A stretch of 64,000 nt of DNA from Paraphysomonas bandaiensis (Eukaryota > Protista > Chrysophyceae). Positions 542 to 50,205 of the stretch are shown here, one piece after another. The position numbers were made by a program, and so were the translations under genes. Numbering within the stretch: the stretch's first letter is position 1; every line of letters starts with the position of its first letter. Below the pieces are notes generated by a model that was given only the letters and a program-made list of their open reading frames with translations, was not told the origin of the DNA and searched no databases. The stretch covers positions 372,001 to 436,000 of the forward strand of contig CBFFRP010000298.1 of NCBI GenBank assembly GCA_965644295.1, given 5' to 3'.

Positions 542-2485
542 TTAAAACATCTTAATTATAGCTTCAACTTCACTTTTTAAATCGGAAGACATGTCCTTCA
601 TTAAGTTTTGAAATTTCTCAAAAAACAAGTGCCACTGATTTTCCTTCAAACTTTTTCTCAAACTACTGTCATCATCGTAACACGTTTCGATACGACAAAG
701 AATGAAGAACTGAAGCGTACGTAGATGTTCAAGAGCAGATATCATAAGATTATCACAATAGTACTCCTCCGCGACTGTGAGAGCATTTAGGGCATTACCT
801 TGCTCCTGCAGTATATAATCATCCAGAACACCGGACTCATCAACAGAACATCCTCGCAATGCTCTTGAATTCAACTGTAATAATGACGATATTATAGCGT
901 TCTCACAAAATACTTTGCACCCTTTCACACCCAACATGTTCGCGCACTCCAAAAGATCCACCACACTGTCACCGGTCGCATATAGTTCGCCGGAAGGCAC
1001 ATCATGCATATACATCCACTGAACAAGCATTTTCAAAGCCGTCGGTTTAGCTTCCACAACAATTTTATTGGAACCGGAACTACTTGATTCAGACGAACCA
1101 TTGGCATAACTCTCGGCCCACCCCCCGTCGAAGAGAGATCGAAAATACGAGCTATGCGCAGCTAAAACTATGCGATGTGCTGGGATGGATTCGATACGAT
1201 TGCTCCCACATGAGTCTAGAACTGTATATTGAGAATAAAGAACCACATCCGCATATCTCATGTCAGGATAAAGCGATGAGCAGTACTGACTCAATGCGGA
1301 ATCGGCTTCATCCCCGCCACAATTAAACTGCAGTGTGCGTTTAAAAAGAGACCCAGATGGAGTACTGAACACCTTTAATATCCAAGAGTCGCTGTGGTAT
1401 TTAGAGGGGAAAACACCTCCACCCATAACAAAAATATATCCACCTTTGAATGATGTAATGCATGAACCATTTCGAGCACTTGGGATAGGCGACCGTGCAC
1501 TTGCTTCGTTCTGAGAGCACCTCACTCCTCTGATACATGTGTGTTGTTGTTTACCATTGACATCGTTAGTGTTGTCCGAAAATTCAAAAGTAAAAACAAG
1601 CAATTCATCCAGATTCTCAGACAGTACTGAAGTTCCACCCCAAATTACCATAGAATTCGAACCCAGACGAGTACTACCTGCACAAAACCTAGGGCGAATG
1701 GCATGATCAGAAGGGTTATCCCACTCTACAAATTCAGTAAGATTAGATACATGTAAAGTGTCCATATGAAAGCAAAAAAGATCGGACGAAATGGTGGTTT
1801 GATACTGCATTGATGAAAAATCAATGTAAGTTCCCCCGAATATATACAAATTCGAATCAATTGCAGTGTAAGCAAACAGGGACAATTGCGTAGGAATTCC
1901 TCGTATGTGCTTCACACTCCACTCCATACTGAGCGTGCTTTCCTCATCTTCACATGATTTCAACGTAGAAATGTCCAACATAAATACAGACTGACAATCT
2001 AATGACAGACTATGTGAATCACCGCCCACTACAATCATCATATCTTCATATATAGCAGCCGCATGTCCTCGTCTTGGAGGTGGATGATAGTCACTACGAA
2101 GAGTAGGTACATGCCACCTCTTATTAACCGTATCATATACATATAAATCATTACTATAATCTATAGCACCAGAAGACAATTGTATGAATCCCCCAAACAC
2201 AATTATCCATCTATCTCTATACACTACAGCAGAGTGCCCTCGTCGACCTGTAAAATAAGCTCCGCATGTCTCCTCTATACGACATATACCGTCCTGTATA
2301 TCGTATACATGTATATCATTACAGTGTGTATATCTGTTGCTGTTATCTGCTATATAACCCCCTCCGATGATGTATAGTTGATGGCATACCTCACTGATTG
2401 TATGGGAACATCGGCCTTGTAGTTGATCAGTGCTGTGGGTTAATTGACGCCATAAGGAATTGATTTCAAATGGTGTTTTGGTCAT
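542..2485 (-). CDS. Kelch-repeat + BTB/POZ protein (LZTR1-like CUL3 adaptor)
   Basis: 647-aa intronless ORF with Kelch repeats (RRGHSAV..IIVFGG, RRGHAAA..MIVVGG, LYIFGG, IFVMGG), followed by a BTB domain (ADVVL..IPAHRIVLAAHSSYFRSLFDGGWAES). Confidence 0.9.
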   Translation of the reverse strand: MTKTPFEINSLWRQLTHSTDQLQGRCSHTISEVCHQLYIIGGGYIADNSNRYTHCNDIHVYDIQDGICRIEETCGAYFTGRRGHSAVVYRDRWIIVFGGFIQLSSGAIDYSNDLYVYDTVNKRWHVPTLRSDYHPPPRRGHAAAIYEDMMIVVGGDSHSLSLDCQSVFMLDISTLKSCEDEESTLSMEWSVKHIRGIPTQLSLFAYTAIDSNLYIFGGTYIDFSSMQYQTTISSDLFCFHMDTLHVSNLTEFVEWDNPSDHAIRPRFCAGSTRLGSNSMVIWGGTSVLSENLDELLVFTFEFSDNTNDVNGKQQHTCIRGVRCSQNEASARSPIPSARNGSCITSFKGGYIFVMGGGVFPSKYHSDSWILKVFSTPSGSLFKRTLQFNCGGDEADSALSQYCSSLYPDMRYADVVLYSQYTVLDSCGSNRIESIPAHRIVLAAHSSYFRSLFDGGWAESYANGSSESSSSGSNKIVVEAKPTALKMLVQWMYMHDVPSGELYATGDSVVDLLECANMLGVKGCKVFCENAIISSLLQLNSRALRGCSVDESGVLDDYILQEQGNALNALTVAEEYYCDNLMISALEHLRTLQFFILCRIETCYDDDSSLRKSLKENQWHLFFEKFQNLMKDMSSDLKSEVEAIIKMF

Positions 2486-3079
2486 AGGGAGGGGCTGGTT
2501 GAGAGGGAGATGGAGAGGTTGGTTGAGAGGGAGGGGAGGTGATTGATGTGGATCTTATGATAGTATTATGCACGATACTGACACTATCGTCTCTGCCTGT
2601 ACTGCGCTACGGTCGTATACCGTACACCTGTACTATAATGCAGTACACTAGAATGTATCGTACCATATATACTCTGTACATATATACACATACTGCTCTG
2701 TATATTCATTCAGTGCTGTACATGTACTCCGTTGCTGTATATCGTATGTACGAAGTATGGCGGTATGCCTCCTGCTCGACAATGTATACTGCTGTACTAC
2801 ACACGCATCATCCAATCATATAGCTCTATTATTTCAATTGGTAACTGGATTGGCTGTGTTTCTGTTAATGTGAATGTATGTATGAGCAGTTGAGTTGTCT
2901 GTACACTAATAGCATCAGCTTACATTATTAACATCATAGATAAGGGCTAGTTCTTTCTCGACAACAATATTCACACTATATCAGCAATGCTCTAATCGCT
3001 CCTACTAACGATAGTTTGAATAGTAGCATACATACGACTGCATCAGTGTATTAAATGCAGAGTACATCACTCTATAATC

Positions 3080-4485
3080 ATGTCGCACAGTATCCCTCTA
3101 CTAGTCATATGTATTCTTATAGGCTGCAATGTCGTACAAACAGCGGAAAAAAATCCAAATAAAAAGCCACGTACACGTGCATATGAGTTGGTGAATGATA
3201 TGATGACTTTAAGTGGAAGAAATCAATCATCAGAAGGAGCGAGCTCATCTATGGATTATCATATTTGTTTAGATCAAGGAGAGGCGTATGCTGCGTCATT
3301 TTTGGTAACTACAAATAACTTAATGCGTCGTTATTACGGAAAGGTGTCGAAATCGAACTTTTGTGAGCAAGGCTCTCTGTCGATGATGAGTGTTCGGAAT
3401 AACGTTCAGTCATTGGATGTACTGGACTATAGTGTCATTCACTTGTCTTCTTACGAACGATCCCAAAGGCGTGTCCGCAAGGAGCTTAAACTGCCGTCTA
3501 TAAATGATAACGTCACATCAGCAGTGCGGAAGGCACTCGACTATATCCGCCTATCTGAGACTTCCTTTGATAGTTCCACCAATTTAAATCGCACGCTAGT
3601 TTTGATGCCCTATCTAGCAGCAACTACAGGACAAGGAAACTCTCGACCGCATAATCGTTATTTGTACCTTGCTGCCTGCTTCTGGAGCATACATAAGTAC
3701 ATGCCCAATATAGTAATAGGTGTTTCGAACTCGCAGGACGAGGCCTATGTAAGGTTGATTTCATATCTATTTCAAATATAGTCTATTTCTTAAGAATAGC
3801 TTTTCAGGTCACAATCTGGTCTCCCTGTGTATGACATTATTCACCTTCCCAATTTGCCAACGAATGCCTCTCTTCCGGTAGCATTAGTTCTTGCAGCGAA
3901 GCAGAAACTACAGAGAAAACAATACGACTTTGACTTCGTTTACTACACAGAATCAGATCAGGTAAGTAGGTATGCGTGATTTATCAATCTGATACTATTT
4001 GATTAGACCCATAACGATTTTTACTATTATGTCAGATATTATTACTGCGCAAGCCTGACGCTCTGTACTCACTCTTTCTTAAAAACGATCGTTATGTTTT
4101 ATTACCTCATCGTCTGATGGCATACGCAGAAGAGGTGTATTTTGTGATGTAATTTCTACATCTTAATAATTTCGTCTAGGCTATTACATTCCGCTTGAAT
4201 ACTACGTCCATCATGTCTGAGACAATAGTAGATGCGGCTGGCCGCAGATCTTCAATCAGTTCACAGAACGCGCTCCTCACTTGGCGACGAGGAGACAGTC
4301 TTCCTTGGACTGAGTACACTTGTTATATCCCACGCCAATTATGCAGGAATCGTAATGGGTGGGTTGACCTCCTTTCTGGTAAAGTGCCTATCATTAAAAT
4401 TTATGGCTTATATGTTCCTCTTGGAAATAGTAACTATCATCGTGAATCATATAGAACCTGTGTTTTTTCTTCGAAATATATGTAG
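3080..4485 (+). CDS. Secreted or membrane-anchored protein of unknown function (multi-exon)
   Basis: Hydrophobic N-terminus (MSHSIPLLVICILIGC). ORF 3080-3781 is continued through GT-AG introns near 3753, 3962 and 4135 to the stop at 4485. Conserved-looking blocks YLAACFWS and FDFVYYTESDQ|ILLLR. Confidence 0.6.
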
Positions 4486-4780: not shown

Positions 4781-5087
4781 TATTGAACTACAACCAACTC
4801 CTACGTGCGTACTTGAAGTTTGGTAAAGTCAATCGCTAGTAGTTATCCTGTATTCTATGTAGCAATGAAATACAGAATATACATGACTACAGTATAGGAG
4901 TAGCTATTACAAGTATACAAAGAAACTGAAAATATAGTAGCTGTTAAAGATATGATTTGTAGAACAGAATGTTGATGTTGGTGAATGACGTGGTTCCTAA
5001 CTCACAGGGCTACAACATCATAAACTTACTATATCTCCTATAATATCAATCAGTCAATATTGCACTAACTAAAAGCGTAAATTAATA
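4781..5087 (+). repeat. 5' LTR (TATT...AATA termini)
   Basis: Direct repeat of 9653-9959. Confidence 0.95.
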
Positions 5088-8000
5088 TGGCAGCGGATGG
5101 AAATTTCACGAATGTCGCCTCAGGCTCAAAGGTACCTCCCTTCGAGGAACTGAACTTCAAGAAATTCAAGAAGTTCTTCACCTCATTCCTCATGAGACAC
5201 AATCGAGCTCATCTTGTCCTCTCAAAGGATAAACCAAGGCACATTCATGATCTAGACTCTACAGTCCCAGCGGGAGCTCATATGACTGATGCACAGAAGA
5301 AGCGACTACGCAAAGCGAAGAAACTCTGGAACACCCGGAACGAGACCGCGTACTCCTTCCTGATGGAAGTGTGCAATGCTCACCCAAAAGCAGGCACAAC
5401 AGCGGCTCTCTACGAAGGAAGTACAGCAAAAGGGTTACTACAGGCACTGGAAGAGAGATTTCTCAATGTTGAAAAGAATACAGTACAGGCAGAGGTCACA
5501 AAGTTCAATTCAATGAAGATTACCTCAAGTCAGTCAGGAGCAGAGTTCGTCGACAGCGTTGAAGCCCAGGCCAAGATTCTCGAGAATCTAGGTCGTGAAG
5601 TCACGGAAGACGACAAGCTCACTCGACTAAAGGAAGGTCTCACAGACAAGAGATATTCCCAACTAGCACACAGCCTGTATACAGCAAACGATGTGACATA
5701 CGCAAGAGCAAGCAGCCTAATCAAAGGGTATGAAAACACATCATTCGGCAAGCATGCGTTGCAAAATTCAGGGGAAGACAGTGTCAATCAAGCAGTGGAT
5801 GACAGTAAATGGAAAGAGCACAAGAGAAAGGGCAGATGCAATAAGTGCAAGAAACTTGGCCACTTTGCTAGGGAGTGCAAGACTCCAGAGCATGTCATAA
5901 AGAGGATGAAGGGGACAAGATCACAGAGAAAAGATAGAGATCACAGAAACAGGGGTGATAACAAAACAAAGCTACCTGTGTGTGAGATATGTGACATCCC
6001 AGGCCATCAGACTAAAGACTGCTTCCACTTGAAGACTGCTAAAGCTGCAGTGGTCAGTTCTAAACGGGGGCGAGACTCTAGAAGGGAAACGGCACCCTAC
6101 AAGAACAAGAAGAAACCGCGAGTGTCTGTACATGATTCAGAAGATGAAGCGGGATACGAATCGATGATATGTGTGGAAGAAGAGGTGAATCTAGCACAGA
6201 GCATGTCAGATGTTATTTATTTAGACAGCGGGTGCAACAAGATGATCCTTACCTCCAAAAACCACATGACCAACCTTCAGCGCGCTGATAGGCAGATGTC
6301 CACAGCGAACAAAGGTAAACTGTCAATACACAGTGTTGGCGATGTAGGAAGCTTTAAAAAGGTGTACTACGCACCTGAAGCAAGTAAGAACCTCGTAGAT
6401 ATGAAGAGCATCACAGATAGGGGTTGTGTTGTGACGTTCGATAATGATGAAGTCGTCATTCGAAATAAGACTACGAACAAGACACTCATTAGACAGAGAA
6501 GTGTTAATGGATTATATCCAGTTCGACTCGAAGACTTACTTCAGCTTGGAGAAGAATCCTCAGCAGCACTTGAGGAGCAGGGGTTTGATGACCAGCGAAT
6601 TCTATGGCACAAAAGACTTGGCCATGTCAACTATGATAAACTGACTGAGTCCGACCGCCGAGGCCTAGTTGATGGAATAAATCTGGACAAGAAATATTTC
6701 AGAAAAAAACACAAAAAAACGATATGCAAATGTAATACCTGCATGCGATCGAAACTCACGAGAAAGAACTTCAGGACTCCACGCCAGTTGATGAACTTAG
6801 ACAACAACCCAAAGGAGAGAGGGGTGCTCAGTGCAGATACGATGGAAGTCCTAAACACGCCATCGATGGAAGGCTACAAACATGTGTTACTATTCAAGCA
6901 CAGTGATGCAAAACATGTATGGGCTTATGGGTTGAAAAACAAGACTGGGAGTGAAGTGTTAAAGTGTATGAAGGACATGGTAGAGACCCAACTTGTCAAA
7001 GAAGGATTGCAACTACGACGATATCATGCAGATGGCGCAGGAGAACTAGTAGGGCAACATGTCAGGCAGTACTTACGTGAAACCACCAGCACAAGGACTG
7101 TACAGGTTACTTGGACTCCACGTGACACACCCGAAATGAATTCGCTATCGGAACGCACTAATCGTACAGTGAAGGAGATGGCCCTTGCTATATTGCTCGA
7201 TAGTGGCATGCCATCAGTATTTTGGTTCAAAGCAGTCTTGCATGCTGTATATCTGATCAACAGGTTACCTACGAAGACAACGAAAGGATACATCTCACCT
7301 TTTGAGTATATTACTGGAACCGCACCAGATGTGAGTGACTTGAAGATCTGGGGCTGCAAGGCATGGGCTATTGTGCCGAAGGAGCAGCGCCGCAAAGAGT
7401 GGAAAGAAAAGGGAAAACCTGGATACTATATGGGACAATGTCAACAACCTGTTGGACACCAAATATATATTCCAGACCTGAATGCTATTATTGTTGCAGT
7501 CAATGCACAGTTTGATGAGTCAATTCCAGAGCGTTCACAGGAGTATTTCGACGAAATAGATAATCTACAAATCGACACCTCAGAAACAGCAGAGAGTGTA
7601 AATGACTATCAGTACCTGGTGGGCCTCAGACATCTTGATGGACACCTGTGTTATGTTACCACCAGAGTGATAGAGAGAAGAGGAGTCATTGTTGCATATA
7701 GGAGATTAGATATGAAAGGAAATACTACCGAGGAGCAAACTCCAATTCATATCAAAGATGTAGTAAAGATGACTCACTCTACAAAGTGTCAGACCGACAA
7801 GTTTAATAGTTTGCGAAATGAGTTGGATCAGACTTGTAATGACAGTGACAATGAACAGAGGACTCCTGACCGCTCAAATCGGGGCGCATCTTCAACAGGT
7901 GGGGCAGATCGAAATCCCAGAACTGAAAAACGACCTCGAAAAAAACGGCACATTGTTAACGTTGGTGTCCTCGGCGATGTCTCATTGTTTCTTGATTCCT

Positions 8001-9604
8001 CCAACAGCACAATTAAAGAGCCACAGACGCTGGCAGAAGCAAAGAAGACTCCACAGAGAACATACTGGATTGAAGCTACCAGGAAGGAGGTGCACAAGCT
8101 TGAACGAAGGACATGCTGGAAGATTGTCCGAAGGCCGAAACACCGAAAAATCATAAAATCTAAATTGGTCTTTAAAGTAAAGCGCGACCATCTTGGAAAA
8201 ATTAAGAAGTTCAAAGTTCGACTTGTGGCGAAAGGGTTTACTCAAGAACAAGGAGTCGACTATAATGAGACATTCTCCCCAGTAGCTAAAGGTGTATCAT
8301 TTAGGCTAGCACTGGCACTGGCTCTGCGATACAATCTGCAACTCCGTCAACTCGATGTAGAAACGGCATTTCCGTATGCAGATCTGGACGAAGACGTGTT
8401 TATGTCTCCACCTGCAGGAATAGATATTCCACAAGGCTGTTGTTTGAAGATTCTGAAGAGTTTGTATGGCCTAAAACAAGCGCCTCGAAATTGGCATTCA
8501 ATGCTGAAGGACAGTATAAAGGCGATGGGGTATAAACAATGTGTTCTTGACCCATGTTTATTTGTACTCAAGGGTACTGATGATAACCTACATATGATAC
8601 TTGTGTATGTAGATGATATCATTGTGCTCAGCTCTGACAGCCGTCATATTGAAGAAGTCATCAGCGCCTTTAAGACTCAATATGCCATGCAAGATATGGG
8701 GGACCTTAAGCATTATTTAGGTCTTACCATTGAGCGTCATAATGGCCAGATTAAGTTACATCAGTCTGCATATGCTAAAGATGTTGTGGCCAGATTCAAT
8801 CACTTGTTGTCAGAAAAGAAGAGACGGTGCAAGGCAACCACACCTCTACCACCTGGCCTAAAGTTGTCCAAGGATGCAAAAGAGGAAGAAACTCGAAAAC
8901 AGAGAGAATACGTTGATGCATTTCCCTATCAATCTGTTATTGGTGCCTTAATGTATTTGGCAGTGCATACTAGACCAGACATGGCATATACAGTAAATCT
9001 TCTCTCCCGGTTCACCACAAGACCCACGTACGCTGCATGTCAAGCTGCTCTGCATACTTTATTGTATTTAGAAAATACAGTTGATCAAGGTATCATATTT
9101 CCTAATTTCACAGATGAAGACCCTCTATGTGTGTACTCTGATGCAGATTGGGCCGGAGATCTGGATACATGCAGATCCACTACAGGGTATATCGTATATC
9201 TGTGGGGTGCTCCAATTGCATGGCAGTCCAGACTGCAGCCAACAGTGGCTACGTCGACTATGGAAGCTGAATATATGGCTGCATATGCTGCAATTCAGGA
9301 GATTGTATGGATACGAGGGGTGATGACAGAGCTCGGAATTCGTGGATTTGAGCTCAGTAAGAATGCGTCTCCAACAATCTTGAATATGGACAGCAAGAGT
9401 GCGATTGATCTAGCTCAGAACCCGGTAAATCATAAACGTTCCAAGCATATTCGGATCAAGTATCATTGGATTCGAGAGCAAGTGGGAGGCTGTATCGTCA
9501 GGCTGAATCATGTGCCAACGGCAGAGATGACAGCAGACGTGATGACTAAAGCCTTGTCCGAGAAGCTGCACTATCAGCATGTGCACACTATGGTATCGCA
9601 CTAA
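5087..9604 (+). CDS. Copia gag-pol polyprotein (Gag, 2 zinc knuckles, protease, integrase, RT, RNase H)
   Basis: Zinc knuckles CNKCKKLGHFAREC and CEICDIPGHQTKDC; protease YLDSGCN; LWHKRLGH..CNTC; integrase SADT/ADGAGE/NSLSER; RT KVRLVAKGFTQ, LYGLKQAP, YVDD; RNase H YSDADWAG, EAEY, ADVMTK. The PR-IN-RT-RH order is that of copia. Confidence 0.97.
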   Translation: MAADGNFTNVASGSKVPPFEELNFKKFKKFFTSFLMRHNRAHLVLSKDKPRHIHDLDSTVPAGAHMTDAQKKRLRKAKKLWNTRNETAYSFLMEVCNAHPKAGTTAALYEGSTAKGLLQALEERFLNVEKNTVQAEVTKFNSMKITSSQSGAEFVDSVEAQAKILENLGREVTEDDKLTRLKEGLTDKRYSQLAHSLYTANDVTYARASSLIKGYENTSFGKHALQNSGEDSVNQAVDDSKWKEHKRKGRCNKCKKLGHFARECKTPEHVIKRMKGTRSQRKDRDHRNRGDNKTKLPVCEICDIPGHQTKDCFHLKTAKAAVVSSKRGRDSRRETAPYKNKKKPRVSVHDSEDEAGYESMICVEEEVNLAQSMSDVIYLDSGCNKMILTSKNHMTNLQRADRQMSTANKGKLSIHSVGDVGSFKKVYYAPEASKNLVDMKSITDRGCVVTFDNDEVVIRNKTTNKTLIRQRSVNGLYPVRLEDLLQLGEESSAALEEQGFDDQRILWHKRLGHVNYDKLTESDRRGLVDGINLDKKYFRKKHKKTICKCNTCMRSKLTRKNFRTPRQLMNLDNNPKERGVLSADTMEVLNTPSMEGYKHVLLFKHSDAKHVWAYGLKNKTGSEVLKCMKDMVETQLVKEGLQLRRYHADGAGELVGQHVRQYLRETTSTRTVQVTWTPRDTPEMNSLSERTNRTVKEMALAILLDSGMPSVFWFKAVLHAVYLINRLPTKTTKGYISPFEYITGTAPDVSDLKIWGCKAWAIVPKEQRRKEWKEKGKPGYYMGQCQQPVGHQIYIPDLNAIIVAVNAQFDESIPERSQEYFDEIDNLQIDTSETAESVNDYQYLVGLRHLDGHLCYVTTRVIERRGVIVAYRRLDMKGNTTEEQTPIHIKDVVKMTHSTKCQTDKFNSLRNELDQTCNDSDNEQRTPDRSNRGASSTGGADRNPRTEKRPRKKRHIVNVGVLGDVSLFLDSSNSTIKEPQTLAEAKKTPQRTYWIEATRKEVHKLERRTCWKIVRRPKHRKIIKSKLVFKVKRDHLGKIKKFKVRLVAKGFTQEQGVDYNETFSPVAKGVSFRLALALALRYNLQLRQLDVETAFPYADLDEDVFMSPPAGIDIPQGCCLKILKSLYGLKQAPRNWHSMLKDSIKAMGYKQCVLDPCLFVLKGTDDNLHMILVYVDDIIVLSSDSRHIEEVISAFKTQYAMQDMGDLKHYLGLTIERHNGQIKLHQSAYAKDVVARFNHLLSEKKRRCKATTPLPPGLKLSKDAKEEETRKQREYVDAFPYQSVIGALMYLAVHTRPDMAYTVNLLSRFTTRPTYAACQAALHTLLYLENTVDQGIIFPNFTDEDPLCVYSDADWAGDLDTCRSTTGYIVYLWGAPIAWQSRLQPTVATSTMEAEYMAAYAAIQEIVWIRGVMTELGIRGFELSKNASPTILNMDSKSAIDLAQNPVNHKRSKHIRIKYHWIREQVGGCIVRLNHVPTAEMTADVMTKALSEKLHYQHVHTMVSH
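5088..5100 (+). promoter_or_regulatory. Putative primer-binding site TGGCAGCGGATGG
   Basis: Starts with TGG immediately after the 5' LTR end. The primer tRNA is not established (resembles tRNA-Leu-type PBSs). Confidence 0.55.
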
Positions 9605-36893: not shown

Positions 36894-37408
36894 GATATAT
36901 CTGAGTAACTATAGAGGTTTATTTAACATTAATATAAATGGGGAATATAGTGACGGGGTTGCTCGATGAATGTGAATGTCATACAGTATATATATATATA
37001 TATCTTAAAGACTTATCTCCCCATATATATATACATATATAACTCTAAACGACTACTCGCATACCCAAATCATCCAACAACAGGCAGTGTGTATAGGGGC
37101 GTTCGTGGTTTGCAAAAAACCTCCAGTTTTTTTCAGATGCGTCCGAACTCTCTCACTTTTTCTACAGTTTTTTTCCAAGGCGTCCGGACCGCACAACTTT
37201 TCTGTAAAATGTGGAAGGTACCGTACTCAAGCCCGCACCATAATGGTGTGGAACTATATAAGTGGTGATGATGAGTGACCAGTGGTATGTATGGTGTTGC
37301 TGGTGAGTAATAGATCCAGGGAGGTGGGTGTTGAAGGAGGAGCTCTCTCATCACAGCATGGTATCATACATACAGAACATAATAACAGCGAGAACATATC
37401 ATAGTAGC

Positions 37409-39668
37409 ATGGAATCAACTACCACGGAATCAACTACCACGGAATCAACTACCACGGAATCAACTACCACGGAATCAACTACCACGGAATCAACTACCAC
37501 AGGGGGCATTAGAAAAGTCGGTGATGGGGAAACCAAAAATCGTAACTCCTCTGCGTTAGCTCAGTTTGCGAAGTACTTGGAGATGCGGTTCGACGGGAAG
37601 AAGAGGTATAAGGAACTCATAGACAGTGATATAAATGTAGAACTATTTCAATGTTTCGGTGGCTTTTTGATCGATCACGCCGTCCATGGAACAACGAAGA
37701 AGCCTTTGACCCTAGGTACTGCTTGGCAGTATTTGTCAGACACGAAGACTGCGCTGACGAAGCGATTTAAAAGAAATGAGTTATTAAGCAGCTCCAATGA
37801 GCTGTGGTACAAAGATGTGAGAGCGGCAGTATCAAAGCATATTATCAAGCGGTGTATCGCACAAGGAGTGCGTATATCAGAGAAAACAAGTCCAGTGGGG
37901 AAAGAACTAATGAAGCGCATAGGTGAATACATTATACATCGGGCATCTGATTTCTCCGGTAAGTGGACATACTTCACATATCTATGATTTACTGTATGCT
38001 AATAAACTTTATTTAGAAGTGAAGAAGTATTCATTGTACAATCTCTATTTGGTTTTCACGTTTGCTGCTGTTGGTCGGGTGTCTGAAGCAATGTTTGCTT
38101 CGTATAATAATGCAATGTGGCACTGCGATGGATACTTAACGTTTGATTGGACAGAATTGAAGGTGGCTTCTATCAAAACAATGAACTTTTTTCCCGACTA
38201 CTCTTGTCTAGAGACTTGTGTTTTCTTCGCTTATTCAATGTACTGGATGTCCTGTACTGCAGCAGATCTCAACGGTGACTTCGTCTTTCCAGATCTAGCA
38301 TTGACTACATCAAGCGCTAGTCAATTTGTTTCTAAGCTACTAAAACAAATGATCGGGAAGGTACCTGGAGTTACAAAGGAAACAACAGGCAAGGGTCTTA
38401 GAGTCGGGGCTGCAACTGACATAGCCAGTAGTCAGTCAGGCGGCATCTTCCATGCGATTATGCGTGGAGGATGGGACTTCTCCGGAGAGTGCAGCATTTT
38501 TGAGTATATCATGGGACTAGATGTCACTATTGCTGTGGGTGGAAAAATTTTAAGTGGCTACTCTAATCCCAGGAATAAGATATATCCACCCGAGTGTGTA
38601 TTTATCAACAATGGAAACCGAGAACAAGTGATGGCGTTAATCGAAACATGTTATCCACTCACTTACCCAGAATTTGGGGTTGATGGCTGTCTATTTCAAT
38701 TTAAACTCTCTGTGTTTGCTACATTCCTTATGAGGTTACCATCATTTGTTTCTAAATACACGGCACAACATGCAGTGGTTTGTAAATTCAAGCACAACAT
38801 GATGCGCCACCATTTCACTTGGAATGACATAATGCAATGGAGTGCTGCGATTGAGGAGGAATGGCTTCGCCTTAATTTTGTAGACACAAGAAATGTAGAC
38901 GAAATTTACCAGGAGAATCGCATTCTTCGAGACCAAATACAACAGCTTCATAGAAAGTGTGACACCCAAACTATTGCAATAGCTGATCTGCACAAGAAAT
39001 TAGACACTGCTGTGGCTGATATTCTAGAAGGCTTGAAAAATATTCCAACGGATACCACTATACCAACTTCAGAGACTGTATCACGGATACCTACATCGCC
39101 TACAGTCTTGCCTCCGATTACTGAAGGACCTTCCAAAGGTCCATCCACTACTACGACAAATGTTTTTCAATACATGAGAGTTAACATGCAGCGCATGCCC
39201 CATATATCCTTCATTCAATATAAAACTCTCGAAAAATTATGCTTATCAACAGTTATTATTGACTATTTTGATTATGAATTACATGAAATTGTAGGAAAGA
39301 GATACCCTATGGTAGACAACGTCAACAAACAGAAAAAACTAAATCGAGTATTGACTAAAGGACTCGGCCTATTGTACGATGACGAGAAACGTTTTCTTGA
39401 TGAGCCGAAACCCTGTATGGCAAGTCAGTCTACTTCGTACAGAGAATGGAAGAGTAATTTAAAATGCATAGCTGAAAAGGTTGAATTGCGTGTTATTGTT
39501 GATTTATTTGGTCAGGAAAATTACGACAAGTTTCACCCCAAAAAAAAAGCCTCTAAGAAATACATAAACAGTATATATGATGCAATGAGTGCACGAAGGG
39601 ACAGTGATGGTAACATTATTCCAAGGACAAAGAAAAGGAAACTTCAGTCTGATGTTAGTAATCTGTAG
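37409..39668 (+). CDS. Tyrosine recombinase (Crypton-type), 2 exons, ~733 aa
   Basis: Intron 37959-38016 (gtaagt..ctaat..tag) restores the frame. SAM-like/core-binding region (FGGFL..GTAWQYLS); box I GRVSE; K in ELKVA; box II TGKGLRVGAA; RGGW...IFEY catalytic Tyr; coiled coil; C-terminal KKRK. Alternative start at 37358. Confidence 0.85.
37411..37500 (+). repeat. 15-bp coding tandem repeat x6 (GGAATCAACTACCAC, encodes ESTTT)
   Basis: Six perfect copies read directly. Confidence 0.95.
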
Positions 39669-40580
39669 AATGCCAATATATGTATTCATTTATAACCACT
39701 CCATCAACTTTTTATAATGTACCCTTATAATTAATGATTCATTAGTAATTGGAATACATCGTATCATTATTTACAGAGCATACAACAGTATAATCAACCA
39801 TTACAGCGTTCAGCATTTTATTATTCGACACAGTCTGATGTTAGTAATCTGTAGAATGCCTATATGTATTCATTTATAACCACTCCATCAACTTTTTATA
39901 ATGTACCCTTATAATTAATGATTCATTAGTAATTGGAATACATCGTATCATTATTTACAGAGCATACAACAGTATAATCAACCATTACAGCGTGCAGCAT
40001 TTTATTATTCGACACAGTCTGATGTTAGTAATCTGTAGAATGCCTATATGTATTCATTTATAACCACTCCATCAACTTTTTATACTGTACCCTTATAATT
40101 AATGATTCATTAGTAATTGGAATACATCGTATCATTATTTACAGAGCATACAACAGTATAATCAACCATCACAGCGTTCAGCATTTTATTATTCCACACC
40201 GTTCAGAATTCTTATCACATACAGCCATACTGCATACCCTTACACAACATGACACATATTCACTGCAAGATGGAACAGGGGCAGCCGGGCGCTTGTGTCG
40301 CTTAGGCATCCCTCTTGCACCGGTAAGTATAAACGTCATTGCGCCTACAACAGCATAATAAACCATCACAGCCTTCAGCATTTTATTATTCCACACCGTT
40401 CAGAATTCTTATCACATACAGCCATACTGCATACCCTTACACAACATGACACATATTCACTGCAAGATGGTACAGGGGCAGCCGGGCGCTTGTGTCGCTT
40501 AGGCATCCCTCTTGCACCGGTAAGTATAAACGTCATTGCGCCTACAACAGCATAATAAACCATGACAACATTCAGCATCT
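39645..40580. repeat. Composite tandem array: unit A (~184 bp) x3 + unit B (197 bp) x2, sharing a ~51-bp motif
   Basis: Unit A starts at 39645, 39831 and 40015. The shared motif TACAACAGYATAATMAACCATYACAGC..CAGCATTTTATTATTCSACAC lies at 39781, 39965, 40149, 40346 and 40543 (last copy degenerate). Confidence 0.9.
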
Positions 40581-41175
40581 CATATACCATCACACAACAT
40601 AGTGCATGCATGATATACAGCCTTCTATTCCTTCAAATGTACCACTTCTCATCTCTCTGCATACCTGACACTTTAAATAGGATGATGGGAGCATGATGCT
40701 CCCACCTGGAATTCAATCATTGATATCCATATCATATCACTTCATACCATAATATACAGCCCTTCACAGTTCCTCTCCATACAGCCTTATAAACCTCGTC
40801 CAGTAACTGCATATCTCATCTCACAGTTTCATGAAATAAGATGGTAGCAACATGTTATCACCTATCATTCAAGCACTCATTAACGTGTATCTGCTGCATA
40901 TGGCTGCCTCGTCATATTACTATATACATATACTCGATGCATGTGATATGATGCACTATGCTATGATGCACTCTGCTGATTGGATCACTCGATGGGCGCA
41001 CTTGCTGTGCGGCCTTTGTGTAAAAACAAGGGTGCGGGATCCCGCACCTGCGGTGCGGGCTAAATAATTTTTCTTGCAAAGCGACTTGTTATAGACGTAC
41101 TCAAGTACTTCGTACTGTATCTGATGTATATCTACCTATACATTGGTACACACCAGTCCAGTATATGGCACACTC

Positions 41176-41316
41176 TCGCATCGTATTTTTGTTCAGAGAT
41201 GCCTCTAATATTGAGACAATAATTATCTGTATTTCAACCGTATTAGTATTGCAGTTATATAGAGTAAATTTACTTCAATTTATTTCCGAAAAATAAGATG
41301 CTGACTGCCGATACGA
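41176..41316 (+). mobile_element. MITE family copy 2 (left end degenerate)
   Basis: Aligns with 23075-23208 and ends TGCCGATACGA. Confidence 0.65.
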
Positions 41317-47505: not shown

Positions 47506-50205
47506 ATGATCATGATAACTATGTATAAGCTTCATTGGATGGTTTATGCTATTAGTATCAGTATCTTATCTAGTCAAAGTACAGAAATATCAAAAAATAA
47601 AAATATTCCATCACATTTTAATATAGCTGGACAAGTTCCACTTATACTACAGAATGAGGAGCCGGATAAGGATAGTCTGGCTATACAACAGGCGATACTG
47701 ATGGCTATTAATGAAATCAATGATAAAACAGATGGAATTCATGATTATCTTTTACCATATACAGAGTTATATATCAGTATACGTGATGTGGATGAATCAT
47801 TTGAAAATGGAGTATATAAATCACTTGAATTGATCGATTCATTTGGTGATAATGAACGGTTAACAGCTTGTATTGGTCCAGATAATTATGATGCCTTAAG
47901 GGGAGGATCCAAAATACTGAGTGATCATCATGTATTCCAGATCGGATATAGTGACAGAAATTCTGCTCTGGGTATGTCTGATATTTACCCAAACTCCCTC
48001 CGAACTGTTCCGGGATACTATGTAGATGGGAGGGTAATTGCAGATTTTGTTCAATTTCTGGGTTGGGAGAGGGTATCTGTATTTTCTACATCAGACACTT
48101 ATGGGAATATGGCTACTTTTTTCTTTGAAAAGGAGGCAGAAGAAGTGGGCATCAAGATTTTGTCTCTACATCATATGTCCAGGGACACAGAAGATTTCTC
48201 GAGCCACATTGAGGATGCGAAGAAAGCTGGTGCAAAGGTTTTTGTTTTTTTAATGGCGTCTACACCAGCATCTGTTCTCCTGAGCCAGGGATATAAATTA
48301 GGCTTATTCAATGCTGACACAGCTATTGTAGCGAACGAGTATGCAGCCACTGTAGAGAATTGGGCCCACTATGACTCGGATTTACTCTCCCTGGTGTCGG
48401 GATTTATTAGCATAAGTTATCATGAGTTACCTGAAGAGAGTAGTGGAAAGTCTGCCTTTTTGCAGCGATTTCGAGGGCAACCGCACACATTAGGCGAATA
48501 TATTGACGGTGTACACGTGTGCAACAACTCTACAGACGACACCGGATATTTTCTGTATCAAGTCGGAGACATTTGCACTGGGTTAAACCACTCCTTGTAT
48601 GCTGTCGACGGAAGCGATCTGCCTCCTGCTGCATATCACGCCTATGATGCAACATATGCAGTAGCATTTGGTTTGCATGACTTAGTCTACGAGAAAAGTA
48701 GACTGTACATAAATGACGAAGAGCTGCGCAGTGAGCTCCTCTTAAATACTCGTTTTCACGGGGCCACTGGAAATGTTGGCTTCTCCACGAAACATATAGA
48801 AGATGGCTTCGATGTCGGTAGCAGAGATAGCGGCCTGACATTCGATGTATTAAACTTTGACAAATCGTTCAGTGTTAAGAGTCCGGTATTGGTTGGTTCA
48901 TATCACAGTGATTGGGGGATAGAGTTGTGTGATGGGTGTGTTATAACATATGCAGGAGATACCACCAAGCCACTCGATAGACCAGAGCCTCATGTGGAGC
49001 ATCTAAATCCAGTATTAGTAGGAATATCTTTAATCATTTCGATTTGTGCTCTTACATTATCGACAATATACAGTGTCATGTTTTATGTGTACAGACGCAC
49101 ACGTCTAATTCGGGCCACTCAACCAGCTGTATACTATGTCGTTTTGTCTGGTTGCTTTCTCGGTGGCATTCGTGCTATCACAGCCTTAATAGTGCCCACA
49201 ACTGGACTTTGTATGTCTCAGATGTGGATTGCACATTTGTCGTTTACCTTAGTGTTCTCTTCCTTACTGGTTAAAGTTTGGAAAATCTACAAAGTCGTTA
49301 ATGCATCATTGAAGCGAGTGAAACTTTCAACCGCACATACACTTCACATCGTCATGTTCTCTACAAGCCCTGTGATCTTGTACCTGCTGTTCATCTCGTC
49401 CATGGGAAGCGTTGAAATTGCAAACGTTTTAGTACATGAGGATCAGCATCGCATTGAGTACCAGAAACGATGTGATTTTGAGCTTCACGACGAGTTAAAT
49501 GGTTTGTATATCCTCGAGCTTATGTGTATGCTCTATGGCCTTTACCTGTGTTACCTTGTCAAAGACATTCCAGAAGCCCTTTCGAACTATAGGACTATCA
49601 GCAAATGTATGACTCCCGAAAGATATGTTATTGCCTGTCTAATATAATGTGTAGGTATTGTGCACATCACATGTTTGGCAGTCACTTTTTTTTCTATTCT
49701 TTACTCTCTGAATCTGAATCCCAATGAAAACCAGTGCTTGGTCTCAGTGGCATTTGCTCTGGCTATAATCACCACTCTTGACCAACTCTTCCGCAACACA
49801 TGCATTAACTTGCTCATGGGAAAGGACATGACGAAATCCTTCAGGGTGGAGAAGGGAATGCACCGCAGCATCGTAGAAATATGGAATGGAGTGCCGATAT
49901 CACCTGCAGAGGTGGGGAGCGACGTAAATATTGATACAGCTGGAGGGAACATCAGCTTGTATCCAACAATCGTGAACATCAAAGATCGTGCTGCACTGGC
50001 AAAGCGGAAGAAGGAGCTCACTGAGTCTATTGAGGCAATGAAGCGTGAACTCGGTATGGTTATCGAAGCAGAGATGTACTCATACACATCCAGCGGATCA
50101 ACTAAATCGTCACAGCACAATAATATATTGTCAGCTGTGGAGGGCCCTGTGAGTGCAATGGAGGAAAATGACACTTCATCATCCTCGGTGAAGGAATTTT
50201 GTTAA
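47506..50205 (+). CDS. Class C (GABA-B-like) GPCR: Venus-flytrap + 7TM, 2 exons
   Basis: Signal peptide; AILMAINEIN..LLP, IGP, YPNSLRTVP, LGWERVSV, AYDATYAVA, FHGATGNV; 7TM with IRATQP, SSLLVKVWKI, KDIPEALSN. Intron at ~49607-49654. Confidence 0.88.

What the first reader, a model, noticed from the sequence alone, without database searches (positions are those of the whole stretch)
37092..41094. Apparently intact Crypton-like tyrosine-recombinase element with definable ends
Seen: the two unannotated ORFs join via a 58-nt intron into a ~733-aa YR with R (GRVSE), K, KxxR (KGLR, Lys in place of the usual His), W (RGGW) and Y (IFEY). There is no RT and no long TIR. A 5-bp direct repeat TATAG lies at each end next to inverted TTTGCAA motifs. 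Established: Cryptons are YR-only DNA transposons with short terminal direct repeats, and stramenopile CryptonS elements are reported to favour TATGG. Inference: a complete, possibly active element that excises as a circle by recombination between the TATAG cores. It carries ~1.4 kb of structured non-coding cargo and a long C-terminal region that I do not recognise.
Basis: partly seen in the sequence, partly recalled or inferred. Interest (0 to 1): 0.8.

Follow-up and report, generated by a model that had tools for sequence, protein, structure and literature searches.

The report
Young Crypton transposon targeting TTTTC
This is an intact copy of a recently multiplied jumping gene that carries only a Cre/Flp-like tyrosine recombinase and inserts just after the word TTTTC.

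Summary
The gene is real. Two ORFs are joined by a 58-nt intron, and two transcript contigs lack exactly that stretch. The protein has the R..K..(K)xxR..W..Y pattern. Its model matches only tyrosine recombinases: Flp Z 16.1, Ndc10 15.4, Cre 14.4.

The proposed ends are wrong. About 40 copies in this 62.5-Mb genome share homology only from window 37198 to 41073/41074. Fifteen are full length and differ by 0-4 substitutions. At least 25 are internal-deletion derivatives, and three deletion types each sit at three or more loci.

The element is 3,871 bp (37203-41073). It ends in TTTTC and sits immediately 3' of a target TTTTC. The preferred target, TTTTC-N4-AAA, mimics the element's own joined ends. 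A paralogous empty site holds a single TTTTC. When the target pentamer is imperfect, only the left copy varies, so this is not a target-site duplication.

The right-hand pair aligns to its interior.

Verdict: an autonomous Crypton, probably of the stramenopile CryptonS type, and a new family of a known kind. Earlier notes of this scan (s1-446417, s1-440771) describe what appears to be the same family on other DNA.

The parts
37198..37202 (+). Target-derived TTTTC at the left junction (not carried by the element)
   Evidence: 29 of 34 independent left junctions read TTTTC. The others read CTTTC (2), TATTC (2) and TTGTC (1).
37203..41073 (+). The element, 3,871 bp, from TGTAAAATG... to ...AATAATTTTTC
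   Evidence: Homology among copies covers exactly this stretch. The genome holds 41 left ends and 40 right ends. The 15 full copies differ by 0-4 substitutions.
37232..37251 (+). Left subterminal CCCGCACC motif within a short imperfect palindrome
   Evidence: CCCGCACC occurs 4 times in the 64-kb window, all within about 45 nt of the element's ends, against 0.5 expected. The predicted hairpin is -6.4 kcal/mol, z -1.5.
37358..37958 (+). CDS exon 1, from the first ATG: low-complexity N-terminus plus most of the N-terminal helical (core-binding-like) domain
   Evidence: ORF. It is continuous with exon 2 in transcripts L053 and L054. Model residues 47-213 are helical and align with the N-terminal domain of Cre.
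37411..37500 (+). 15-bp x6 coding repeat (TTEST), variable in copy number between copies
   Evidence: The count is 6 units here, 5 in nine other full copies and 3 in P0001.
37959..38016 (+). 58-nt GT..AG intron
   Evidence: Exactly this stretch is missing from transcript contigs L053 and L054.
38017..39668 (+). CDS exon 2 with stop: catalytic domain, coiled coil, disordered linker and conserved C-terminal domain
38076..38507 (+). Span of the catalytic residues: R 38076-78, K 38160-62, K at the His-II position 38391-93, R 38400-02, W 38472-74, Y 38505-07
   Evidence: In 30 relatives R, K and R are invariant, and W and Y are in 29 of 30. The profile aligns KGLR/RGGW/FEY to Cre H289-xx-R292, W315 and Y324.
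39540..39548 (+). A9 run. Ten of the 15 full copies have A8, which shifts the frame and cuts off the last ~36 residues.
39645..40578 (+). 3' non-coding tandem repeats (184 bp x3, 197 bp x2.2)
   Evidence: No Rfam match. The small ORFs have no Pfam hit. The shortest mobilised derivatives lack this stretch.
41030..41059 (+). Right subterminal palindrome plus a third copy of the motif (GGGTGCGGGATCCCGCACC..GGTGCGGG)
   Evidence: The predicted hairpin is -10.8 kcal/mol, z -2.4.
41069..41073 (+). Element-borne terminal TTTTC, the donor core
   Evidence: All 35 right ends finish in a T-run plus C. Two differ only in the length of the T-run.
37092..37197 (.). Not part of the element: the left portion of a MITE-like repeat ('X') into which this copy inserted.
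   Evidence: 13 other partial copies in the genome. Full copies have ~27-bp terminal inverted repeats that begin TAGGGGCG.... Alignment.
41074..41090 (.). Not part of the element: the continuation of repeat X after the insertion.
   Evidence: Aligns to the interior of X copy L024.

Best explanation
Window 37203-41073 is an autonomous Crypton-type DNA transposon of a stramenopile nuclear genome. Its single gene has two exons and encodes 750 aa from the first ATG. The product is a Flp/Cre-like tyrosine recombinase followed by a coiled coil and a family-conserved C-terminal domain of unknown fold. The element ends in TTTTC.

Inferred mechanism, following the Goodwin 2003 model that was observed in Chlamydomonas in 2023. 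The recombinase joins the two ends into a circle whose junction reads AATAATTTTTC|TGTAAAATG. It then recombines that site with genomic TTTTC-N4-AAA sites that resemble it. After insertion the target's TTTTC lies on the left and the element's TTTTC on the right, and no target-site duplication is made. The CCCGCACC motifs and palindromes just inside both ends are the likely protein-binding sites.

Shown: the YR fold and catalytic residues, the exact ends, the target preference, an empty site, recent multiplication, mobilisation of deletion derivatives in trans, and transcription with splicing.

Inferred: the circle, the positions of strand exchange, and which domain binds which motif.
For: Fold. 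The AF2 model has pLDDT 83, above 90 over roughly residues 60-480. The top 46 VIA rows are all tyrosine recombinases, Ndc10 or topoisomerase IB: Flp Z 16.1 with 231 aligned, Ndc10 15.4, Cre 14.4 with 258 aligned, lambda Int 12.1. The next row drops to Z 4.7. Foldseek agrees.

Catalytic residues are conserved in relatives and align to Cre H289/R292/W315/Y324.

Mobility. One search lists 72 matches. The genome holds 41 left and 40 right ends. Flanks are unrelated at 34 left and 35 right junctions. The 15 full copies differ by 0-4 substitutions. There are at least six deletion types, three of them at 3 or more loci.

Target. TTTTC at 29 of 34 left junctions. A at +5, +6 and +7 in 25, 21 and 22 of 35 sites.

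Empty site. A paralogous site with a single TTTTC next to 1.5 kb of 98%-identical flank.

Expression. Spliced transcripts exist.

Other genes. No other enzyme or RNA is encoded.

Literature. The Crypton definition and the terminal repeats of CryptonS are in PMC3212892. An active Chlamydomonas Crypton ends in CACCG and targets CAYCG (PMC9977147).
Against: No circle junction or head-to-tail joint of this family is present in the assembly, so the circular intermediate is not observed.

The His-II position carries Lys. This position is T, H or K across the family, and by my own recollection Lys sits there in type IB topoisomerases.

Variant pentamers occur only at left junctions (5 against 0). A symmetric heteroduplex overlap would predict about half on each side.

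About 40 copies mean a net gain in copy number, which simple excision and reinsertion does not explain.

Pfam gives no hit for this protein itself.

Membership of CryptonS could not be tested against Repbase sequences.
Confidence: 0.82

Rival explanations
1. One reading: the element spans 37092-41094 and excises as a circle by recombination between TATAG cores next to inverted TTTGCAA motifs.
For: TATAG is present at both positions. CryptonS elements often use TATGG.
Against: None of about 40 copies shares sequence beyond 37198 or 41074. The left stretch is the inverted repeat of an independent dispersed MITE-like repeat, and the right-hand flank aligns to that repeat's interior.
Confidence: 0.02
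2. Same element, different chemistry. It moves replicatively or through single-stranded, hairpin-folded ends (as in integron attC or CTX-XerCD recombination, or the 'insert 3' of a pentamer' logic of IS200/IS605), not through a double-stranded circle with a homologous overlap.
For: Insertion is always exactly 3' of the pentamer. The target's own variant pentamer is kept on the left in 5 of 5 mismatched cases, and the right end never varies. Both ends carry subterminal palindromes. About 40 near-identical copies mean copy gain. Copy gain together with clean excision was also seen in Chlamydomonas.
Against: The protein's fold matches double-strand recombinases (Flp, Cre). The hairpins are short and only mildly stable, with z -1.5 and -2.4. 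Five against zero is a small sample. The target's AAA at +5 to +7 fits a duplex, lox-like half-site.
Confidence: 0.1
3. These copies no longer move themselves. The Lys-for-His recombinase is inactive or impaired, and the family was spread by the recombinase of another Crypton family in the same genome.
For: Lys occupies the His-II position. Ten of 15 full copies have a frameshifted C-terminus. Diverged Crypton relatives exist in the genome, and earlier scan notes list other families.
Against: 20 of 126 relatives carry Lys and 43 carry Thr at this position, so it is not a fixed His in this lineage. Five copies keep the full ORF. The gene is transcribed and spliced. The ends and binding motifs are family-specific.
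Confidence: 0.05
4. It is not a transposon: a domesticated recombinase gene, or copies made by segmental duplication.
For: One empty site lies in a local 1.5-kb duplication.
Against: The flanks are unrelated at 34 left and 35 right junctions, and the ends are identical to the base. Several deletion derivatives are dispersed across contigs.
Confidence: 0.01

Closest known systems
CryptonS elements of oomycetes and the diatom Phaeodactylum tricornutum (Kojima & Jurka 2011, PMC3212892)
   Same: Stramenopile host. A 3-5 kb element with one tyrosine-recombinase gene, no GCR1_C domain and a conserved C-terminal region. A 5-7 bp terminal direct repeat. Non-autonomous deletion derivatives. The nearest ESM-Atlas clusters are oomycete and diatom proteins of unknown family. 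The terminal repeat of CryptonS-1_PTri, CTGTAAG, resembles this element's junction C|TGTAAA. That resemblance is a lead only.
   Different: The core is TTTTC, not TATGG, TTACTG, TAATG or CTGTAAG. The copy number (about 40) and copy identity (at least 99.9%) are higher than for most listed families. Phylogenetic placement could not be tested because no Repbase sequences were at hand.
CryptonF-1_cRei of Chlamydomonas reinhardtii, described by its authors as the first Cryptons seen moving (Lopez-Cortegano et al. 2023, PMC9977147)
   Same: One terminus carries a fixed pentamer (CACCG there, TTTTC here), and insertions lie at a near-identical, slightly degenerate target (CAYCG there, mostly TTTTC here). 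There is no target-site duplication. Copy number rises.
   Different: A different Crypton group (F, in a green alga). Here no GCR1_C or NDC10_II signature was found, and no movement was observed directly.
Flp (yeast 2-micron plasmid), Cre (phage P1) and the Ndc10 DNA-binding domain
   Same: The same fold across the catalytic domain: Z 16.1 for Flp and 15.4 for Ndc10. With Cre both domains align (Z 14.4). The catalytic R-K-xxR-W-Y pattern is shared.
   Different: Only 8-13% sequence identity. Lys replaces His-II. The protein has an added coiled coil (about residues 464-533 of P0001) and a C-terminal domain. It sits in a transposon, not in a plasmid, a phage or a kinetochore protein.

Membership tests
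Crypton (YR-only DNA transposon) | Encodes a tyrosine recombinase with the catalytic residues | tested here: met
   Fold Z 14-16 to Flp and Cre. R, K, R, W and Y are conserved. His-II is Lys.
Crypton (YR-only DNA transposon) | No reverse transcriptase or other transposition enzyme in the element | tested here: met
   Pfam finds nothing else in the two exons. Two of the other small ORFs were scanned and gave no hit. No Rfam match.
Crypton (YR-only DNA transposon) | No LTRs, long TIRs or split direct repeats | tested here: met
   The repeat finder reports only short imperfect pairs and none at the termini.
Crypton (YR-only DNA transposon) | A short (4-7 bp) direct repeat at the termini matching the target, and no target-site duplication | tested here: met
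   TTTTC lies at both junctions. In 5 cases the left copy varies while the right does not. The empty site has one TTTTC.
Crypton (YR-only DNA transposon) | Multiple dispersed copies | tested here: met
   41 left ends and 40 right ends on many contigs.
Crypton (YR-only DNA transposon) | Extrachromosomal circular intermediate | not testable with these tools
   No reads were available. No head-to-tail joint is present in the assembly.
CryptonS | Stramenopile host | tested here: inconclusive
   One host gene's best named relative is a chrysophyte (Paraphysomonas) at 59% identity. Relatives of the recombinase occur in the diatoms Skeletonema and Grammatophora. The exact host lineage was not resolved.
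CryptonS | No GCR1_C domain, and a C-terminal region conserved within the group | tested here: inconclusive
   No GCR1_C hit at E up to 1 or in 30 relatives. The C-terminal motifs are conserved among relatives. Comparison with named CryptonS proteins was not possible.
CryptonS | The YR domain clusters with CryptonS in a phylogeny | not testable with these tools
The nearest Atlas clusters are oomycete and diatom, which is a lead only.
CryptonS | TATGG termini (majority of the group, not universal) | tested here: not met
   The core here is TTTTC. Known exceptions are TTACTG, TAATG and CTGTAAG.
CryptonF | C-terminal GCR1_C DNA-binding domain | tested here: not met
   No Pfam GCR1_C or NDC10_II hit in this protein or in 30 relatives.
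CryptonA / DUF3504 | The YR domain matches DUF3504 | tested here: not met
   No DUF3504 hit. It appears only as a distant Atlas neighbour.
DIRS / Ngaro / PAT YR retrotransposons | RT and RNase H genes, with terminal repeats and an internal complementary region | tested here: not met
   No RT anywhere in the 3.87-kb unit, and no such repeats.

The most novel reading that the evidence does not exclude
Insertion may be asymmetric and replicative. Only one terminus carries the donor pentamer. The target's own pentamer, even when imperfect, always stays on the left (5 of 5 cases), and the family has risen to about 40 near-identical copies. That pattern would fit a copy-out circle, or strand-specific recombination that uses the subterminal hairpins, better than the textbook cycle of excising a duplex circle and re-integrating it through a homologous overlap. 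If so, this family would be a tractable model for a Crypton mechanism that is still unsolved.
Probability: 0.2. Interest if true: 0.65.

Novelty: new member of a known kind. Interest (0 to 1): 0.4.

Why it matters
Cryptons are among the least studied classes of eukaryotic transposon. According to its authors, movement was first seen in 2023, in Chlamydomonas mutation-accumulation lines (PMC9977147). I found no biochemical study of a Crypton recombinase.

This family offers what an experiment needs:
- ends known to the base;
- a defined target (TTTTC-N4-AAA);
- an empty site;
- candidate binding motifs (CCCGCACC);
- minimal cis requirements read from natural deletion derivatives (at most about 860 bp on the left and 224 bp on the right);
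- intact and naturally frameshifted alleles;
- a natural Lys variant of the His-II catalytic position.

It also corrects the annotation of this locus. The copy is a nested insertion inside a MITE-like repeat. As biology it remains an ordinary member of a known class.

Tried and rejected
1. Pfam on both exons gave no recombinase hit. The word-indexed protein search found only the same protein. With a profile it added only one Skeletonema protein.
2. No empty allele of this window's own insertion was found. The right flank is unique and the left flank is a dispersed repeat.
3. A reconstructed empty site for a second copy (C304) was not found.
4. No head-to-tail or circle-type junction of this family is present in the assembly.
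5. The junction seen in the transcript contigs is not in the assembly. This may be a strain polymorphism, an assembly gap or a chimeric contig.
6. The C-terminal domain folded alone gave a poor model (pLDDT 58) and no PDB match at E up to 0.001, so its fold stays unknown.
7. Rfam found nothing in the element.
8. Conservation of the C|TGTAAA core in relatives (Skeletonema and metagenome contigs) was not seen.
9. Rejected readings: a Helitron or HUH element (no Rep, and the protein has the YR fold); a DIRS-like retroelement (no RT); a domesticated gene (multi-copy).
Full report
**Handling of the spliced model.** I never joined the exons myself. Exon 1 (window:37328-37957) and exon 2 (window:38016-39665) were searched separately, by reference. 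As a full-length proxy I used P0001, a database protein that the exon-2 search returned. It is 99% identical to the window's exons and was called on an intron-less transcript contig. The joined step is therefore left out.

**Is the observation in the sequence?**
- The two ORFs exist, at 37328-37987 and 37923-39668.
- A GT..AG stretch at 37959-38016 (58 nt) restores the frame.
- Two contigs of JGI sample 3300017004 (L053, L054) align to the element on both sides of exactly that stretch and lack it. The intron is therefore spliced in vivo and the gene is transcribed.
- From the first ATG (37358) the product is 750 aa.
- TATAG is present at 37093 and at 41090, but see the section on the ends below.

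**Is it a tyrosine recombinase?**
- Pfam sees nothing in either exon.
- An exhaustive HMMER search with P0001 finds 560 relatives at E up to 1e-3, and 215 at E up to 1e-10. Most are unnamed proteins of about 700 aa from marine metagenomes and transcriptomes. They include the diatoms Skeletonema menzelii and Grammatophora oceanica.
- In an alignment of 30 relatives, G215, R216, E219, K244 and R324 are invariant. R345, G346, W348 and Y359 are at least 90% conserved (P0001 numbering).
- Two of the 30 relatives reach Pfam Phage_integrase and one reaches Phage_int_SAM_5.
- The family profile aligns to Cre so that K-G-L-R falls on H289-x-x-R292, RGGW on W315 and FEY on Y324. The E-value is only 0.03, so this counts as support and not as proof.
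- The AlphaFold model built on 126 sequences has mean pLDDT 83, and above 90 over roughly residues 60-480.
- Foldseek's significant matches are all Flp, Cre, lambda Int, XerH or XerA.
- VIA-align gives Flp Z 16.1 (231 residues aligned, rmsd 3.6), the Ndc10 DNA-binding domain 15.4, Cre 14.4 (258 aligned, both domains), lambda Int 12.1, XerH 12.0 and IntI 11.3. The top 46 rows are all of this fold, and the next row drops to Z 4.7.
Across 126 relatives that position reads T 43, H 33 and K 20, so it is not a fixed His in this lineage. From my own knowledge, type IB topoisomerases carry Lys at the equivalent position.
- After the catalytic domain the model shows a long coiled coil (464-533), a disordered linker (538-594) and a helical C-terminal domain.
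- The C-terminal domain's motifs recur in relatives. Its fold could not be identified.

**Where are the ends?**
- The element is multi-copy. One search lists 72 matches in the 62.5-Mb assembly, and all of them share only window 37198-41074.
- Pattern searches count 41 left ends and 40 right ends.
- I read 34 independent left junctions and 35 independent right junctions.
- Every left junction reads flank, then a pentamer, then TGTAAAATG. The pentamer is TTTTC in 29 cases, CTTTC in 2, TATTC in 2 and TTGTC in 1.
- Every right end reads ...GGGCTAAATAAT, then a T-run and C, followed by unrelated flank.
- The element proper is therefore 37203-41073 (3,871 bp). It ends in TTTTC and lies immediately 3' of a TTTTC-like target.
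- Information content is about 1.7-2.0 bits at the five target positions.
- Downstream of the insertion point, positions +5, +6 and +7 are A in 25, 21 and 22 of 35 sites. About 30% would be expected at 40% GC.
- The preferred target, TTTTC-N4-AAA, thus mimics the element's own joined ends, TTTTC-TGTA-AAAT.
- Where the target pentamer is imperfect, the left copy differs from the right copy, so the repeat is not a target-site duplication.
- For the copy at C297:221007 a paralogous uninterrupted site exists 6 kb away. It has 1.5 kb of 98%-identical left flank, one TTTTC, and then about 26 bp of the same right flank.

- Window 37092-37197 is the left part of a dispersed MITE-like repeat, with 13 other partial copies.
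- Full copies of that repeat have terminal inverted repeats of about 27 bp that begin TAGGGGCGTCCGTGGTTTGCAAAAAACC.
- The stretch just right of the element (41074-41090) aligns to the interior of the same repeat.
- This copy is therefore a nested insertion. The left-hand TATAG/TTTGCAA lies in the host repeat's inverted repeat. The right-hand TTGCAA lies in sequence that aligns to the repeat's interior, which reaches the second TATAG.

**Evidence of recent activity.**
- The 15 full-length copies differ by 0-4 substitutions over 3.87 kb, by one unit of the 15-bp repeat, and by an A9/A8 run at 39540.
- Five copies, including this one, have A9 and the full exon 2. Ten have A8 and lose the last ~36 residues.
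- There are at least six different internal deletions. Three of them are found at three or more unrelated loci: element 1-795 + 2100-3871, 1-1198 + 3528-3871, and 1-857 + 3648-3871.
- All of these lack the catalytic domain, so they were mobilised in trans. They limit the cis requirement to at most about 860 bp on the left and 224 bp on the right.
- Most of the 1.4-kb 3' region (184-bp x3 and 197-bp x2.2 repeats) is therefore dispensable. It has no Rfam match, and its small ORFs have no Pfam match.
- The transcript contigs begin 116 nt outside the element, in another dispersed repeat, and join it at ...TTTTTTC|TGTAAAATG. That junction is not in this assembly. It may be an insertion polymorphism between strains, but an assembly gap or a chimeric contig is not excluded.

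**Candidate binding sites.**
- CCCGCACC occurs four times in the 64-kb window, against 0.5 expected. One copy lies about 30 nt inside the left end. Three lie 15-43 nt inside the right end, where they form a palindrome.
- The predicted hairpins are modest, with z -1.5 and -2.4.
- There are no long TIRs.

**Mechanism.**
- The anatomy fits the Crypton model of Goodwin et al. 2003, as summarised in PMC3212892. It also fits what was observed for CryptonF-1_cRei in Chlamydomonas: the terminus is CACCG, the target is CAYCG, excisions are clean, and copy number still rises (PMC9977147).
- In this model the recombinase circularises the element. It then recombines the junction site with a look-alike genomic site.
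- The circle itself is inferred. I found no head-to-tail joint of this family and had no reads.
- Two observations are not explained by a simple symmetric overlap. Variant pentamers occur only on the left (5 against 0). The family has gained copies.

**Classification.**
- All testable features that define a Crypton are met.
- Several things point to the stramenopile group CryptonS: no GCR1_C, NDC10_II or DUF3504 signature; a conserved C-terminal region; a stramenopile host (one gene only, nearest named relative at 59% in Paraphysomonas); and oomycete and diatom clusters as nearest Atlas neighbours.
- The group's core, TATGG in most members, is not used here.
- CryptonS-1_PTri's CTGTAAG resembles C|TGTAAA, but no phylogeny against named elements could be made.
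- This is a new family of a known kind.
- Earlier notes of this scan describe what appears to be the same family elsewhere in this genome (s1-446417: TTTTC target and an empty site; s1-440771: 3.9 kb, GAAAA repeat, palindromes just inside the ends). I had reached the same ends and target before reading them.

Noticed in passing
window 41184-41316: A very high-copy dispersed repeat of about 130 bp. It gave 862 first-look candidates in the genome at 87-92% identity. It is probably a MITE or SINE.
   Followed up: no
window 37092-37197 and 41074-41090; L024, L022: A MITE-like repeat 'X' with terminal inverted repeats of about 27 bp (TAGGGGCGTCCGTGGTTTGCAAAAAACC). It is rich in TTTTC/GAAAA words. 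At least two other copies of the Crypton also lie in or next to it (C298:180333, C115:14981).
   Followed up: partly
window 5087-9604 (+): An intact 1,505-aa copia-type Gag-Pol ORF (zf-CCHC, gag_pre-integrs, RVT_2).
   Followed up: no
34 left and 35 right junctions of the family (L001-L052): Imperfect pentamers (CTTTC, TATTC, TTGTC) occur only at left junctions, 5 against 0. A symmetric heteroduplex overlap would predict about half on each side.
   Followed up: partly
L017-L020, L040-L050 (deletion derivatives, element 1-795 + 2100-3871): In most copies the 5' 795 bp is only 96% identical to the full element (98% in two), while the 3' 1.77 kb is 100% identical. This suggests a chimeric or recombinant origin for the commonest non-autonomous form.
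   Followed up: no
L053:1-116 and L054:1-116: The spliced transcript contigs start in a different dispersed repeat (25 matches in the genome) and join the element at a TTTTC. That insertion is absent from the assembly. The uninserted paralogues read ...TTTTTTC|ACAACAATCC.
   Followed up: partly
L031:4672-7487 and L032:281-3097: A distant relative (P0015, 28% identical) lies on two metagenome contigs and shares 2,817 bp. The shared stretch is bounded on the left by ...TGAAAA, a T-run and C, then GC-rich palindromes, and on the right by ...GCTAGAAA. An A/T pentamer core plus subterminal palindromes may be a habit of this lineage.
   Followed up: partly
window 39540-39548: An A9/A8 homopolymer polymorphism splits the 15 full copies into 5 with the long ORF and 10 with a truncated C-terminus. 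The truncation removes a family-conserved motif and a KKRK stretch.
   Followed up: partly
window 47506-49647 (+): A class-C GPCR-like ORF (ANF_receptor plus 7tm_3) in this protist genome.
   Followed up: no
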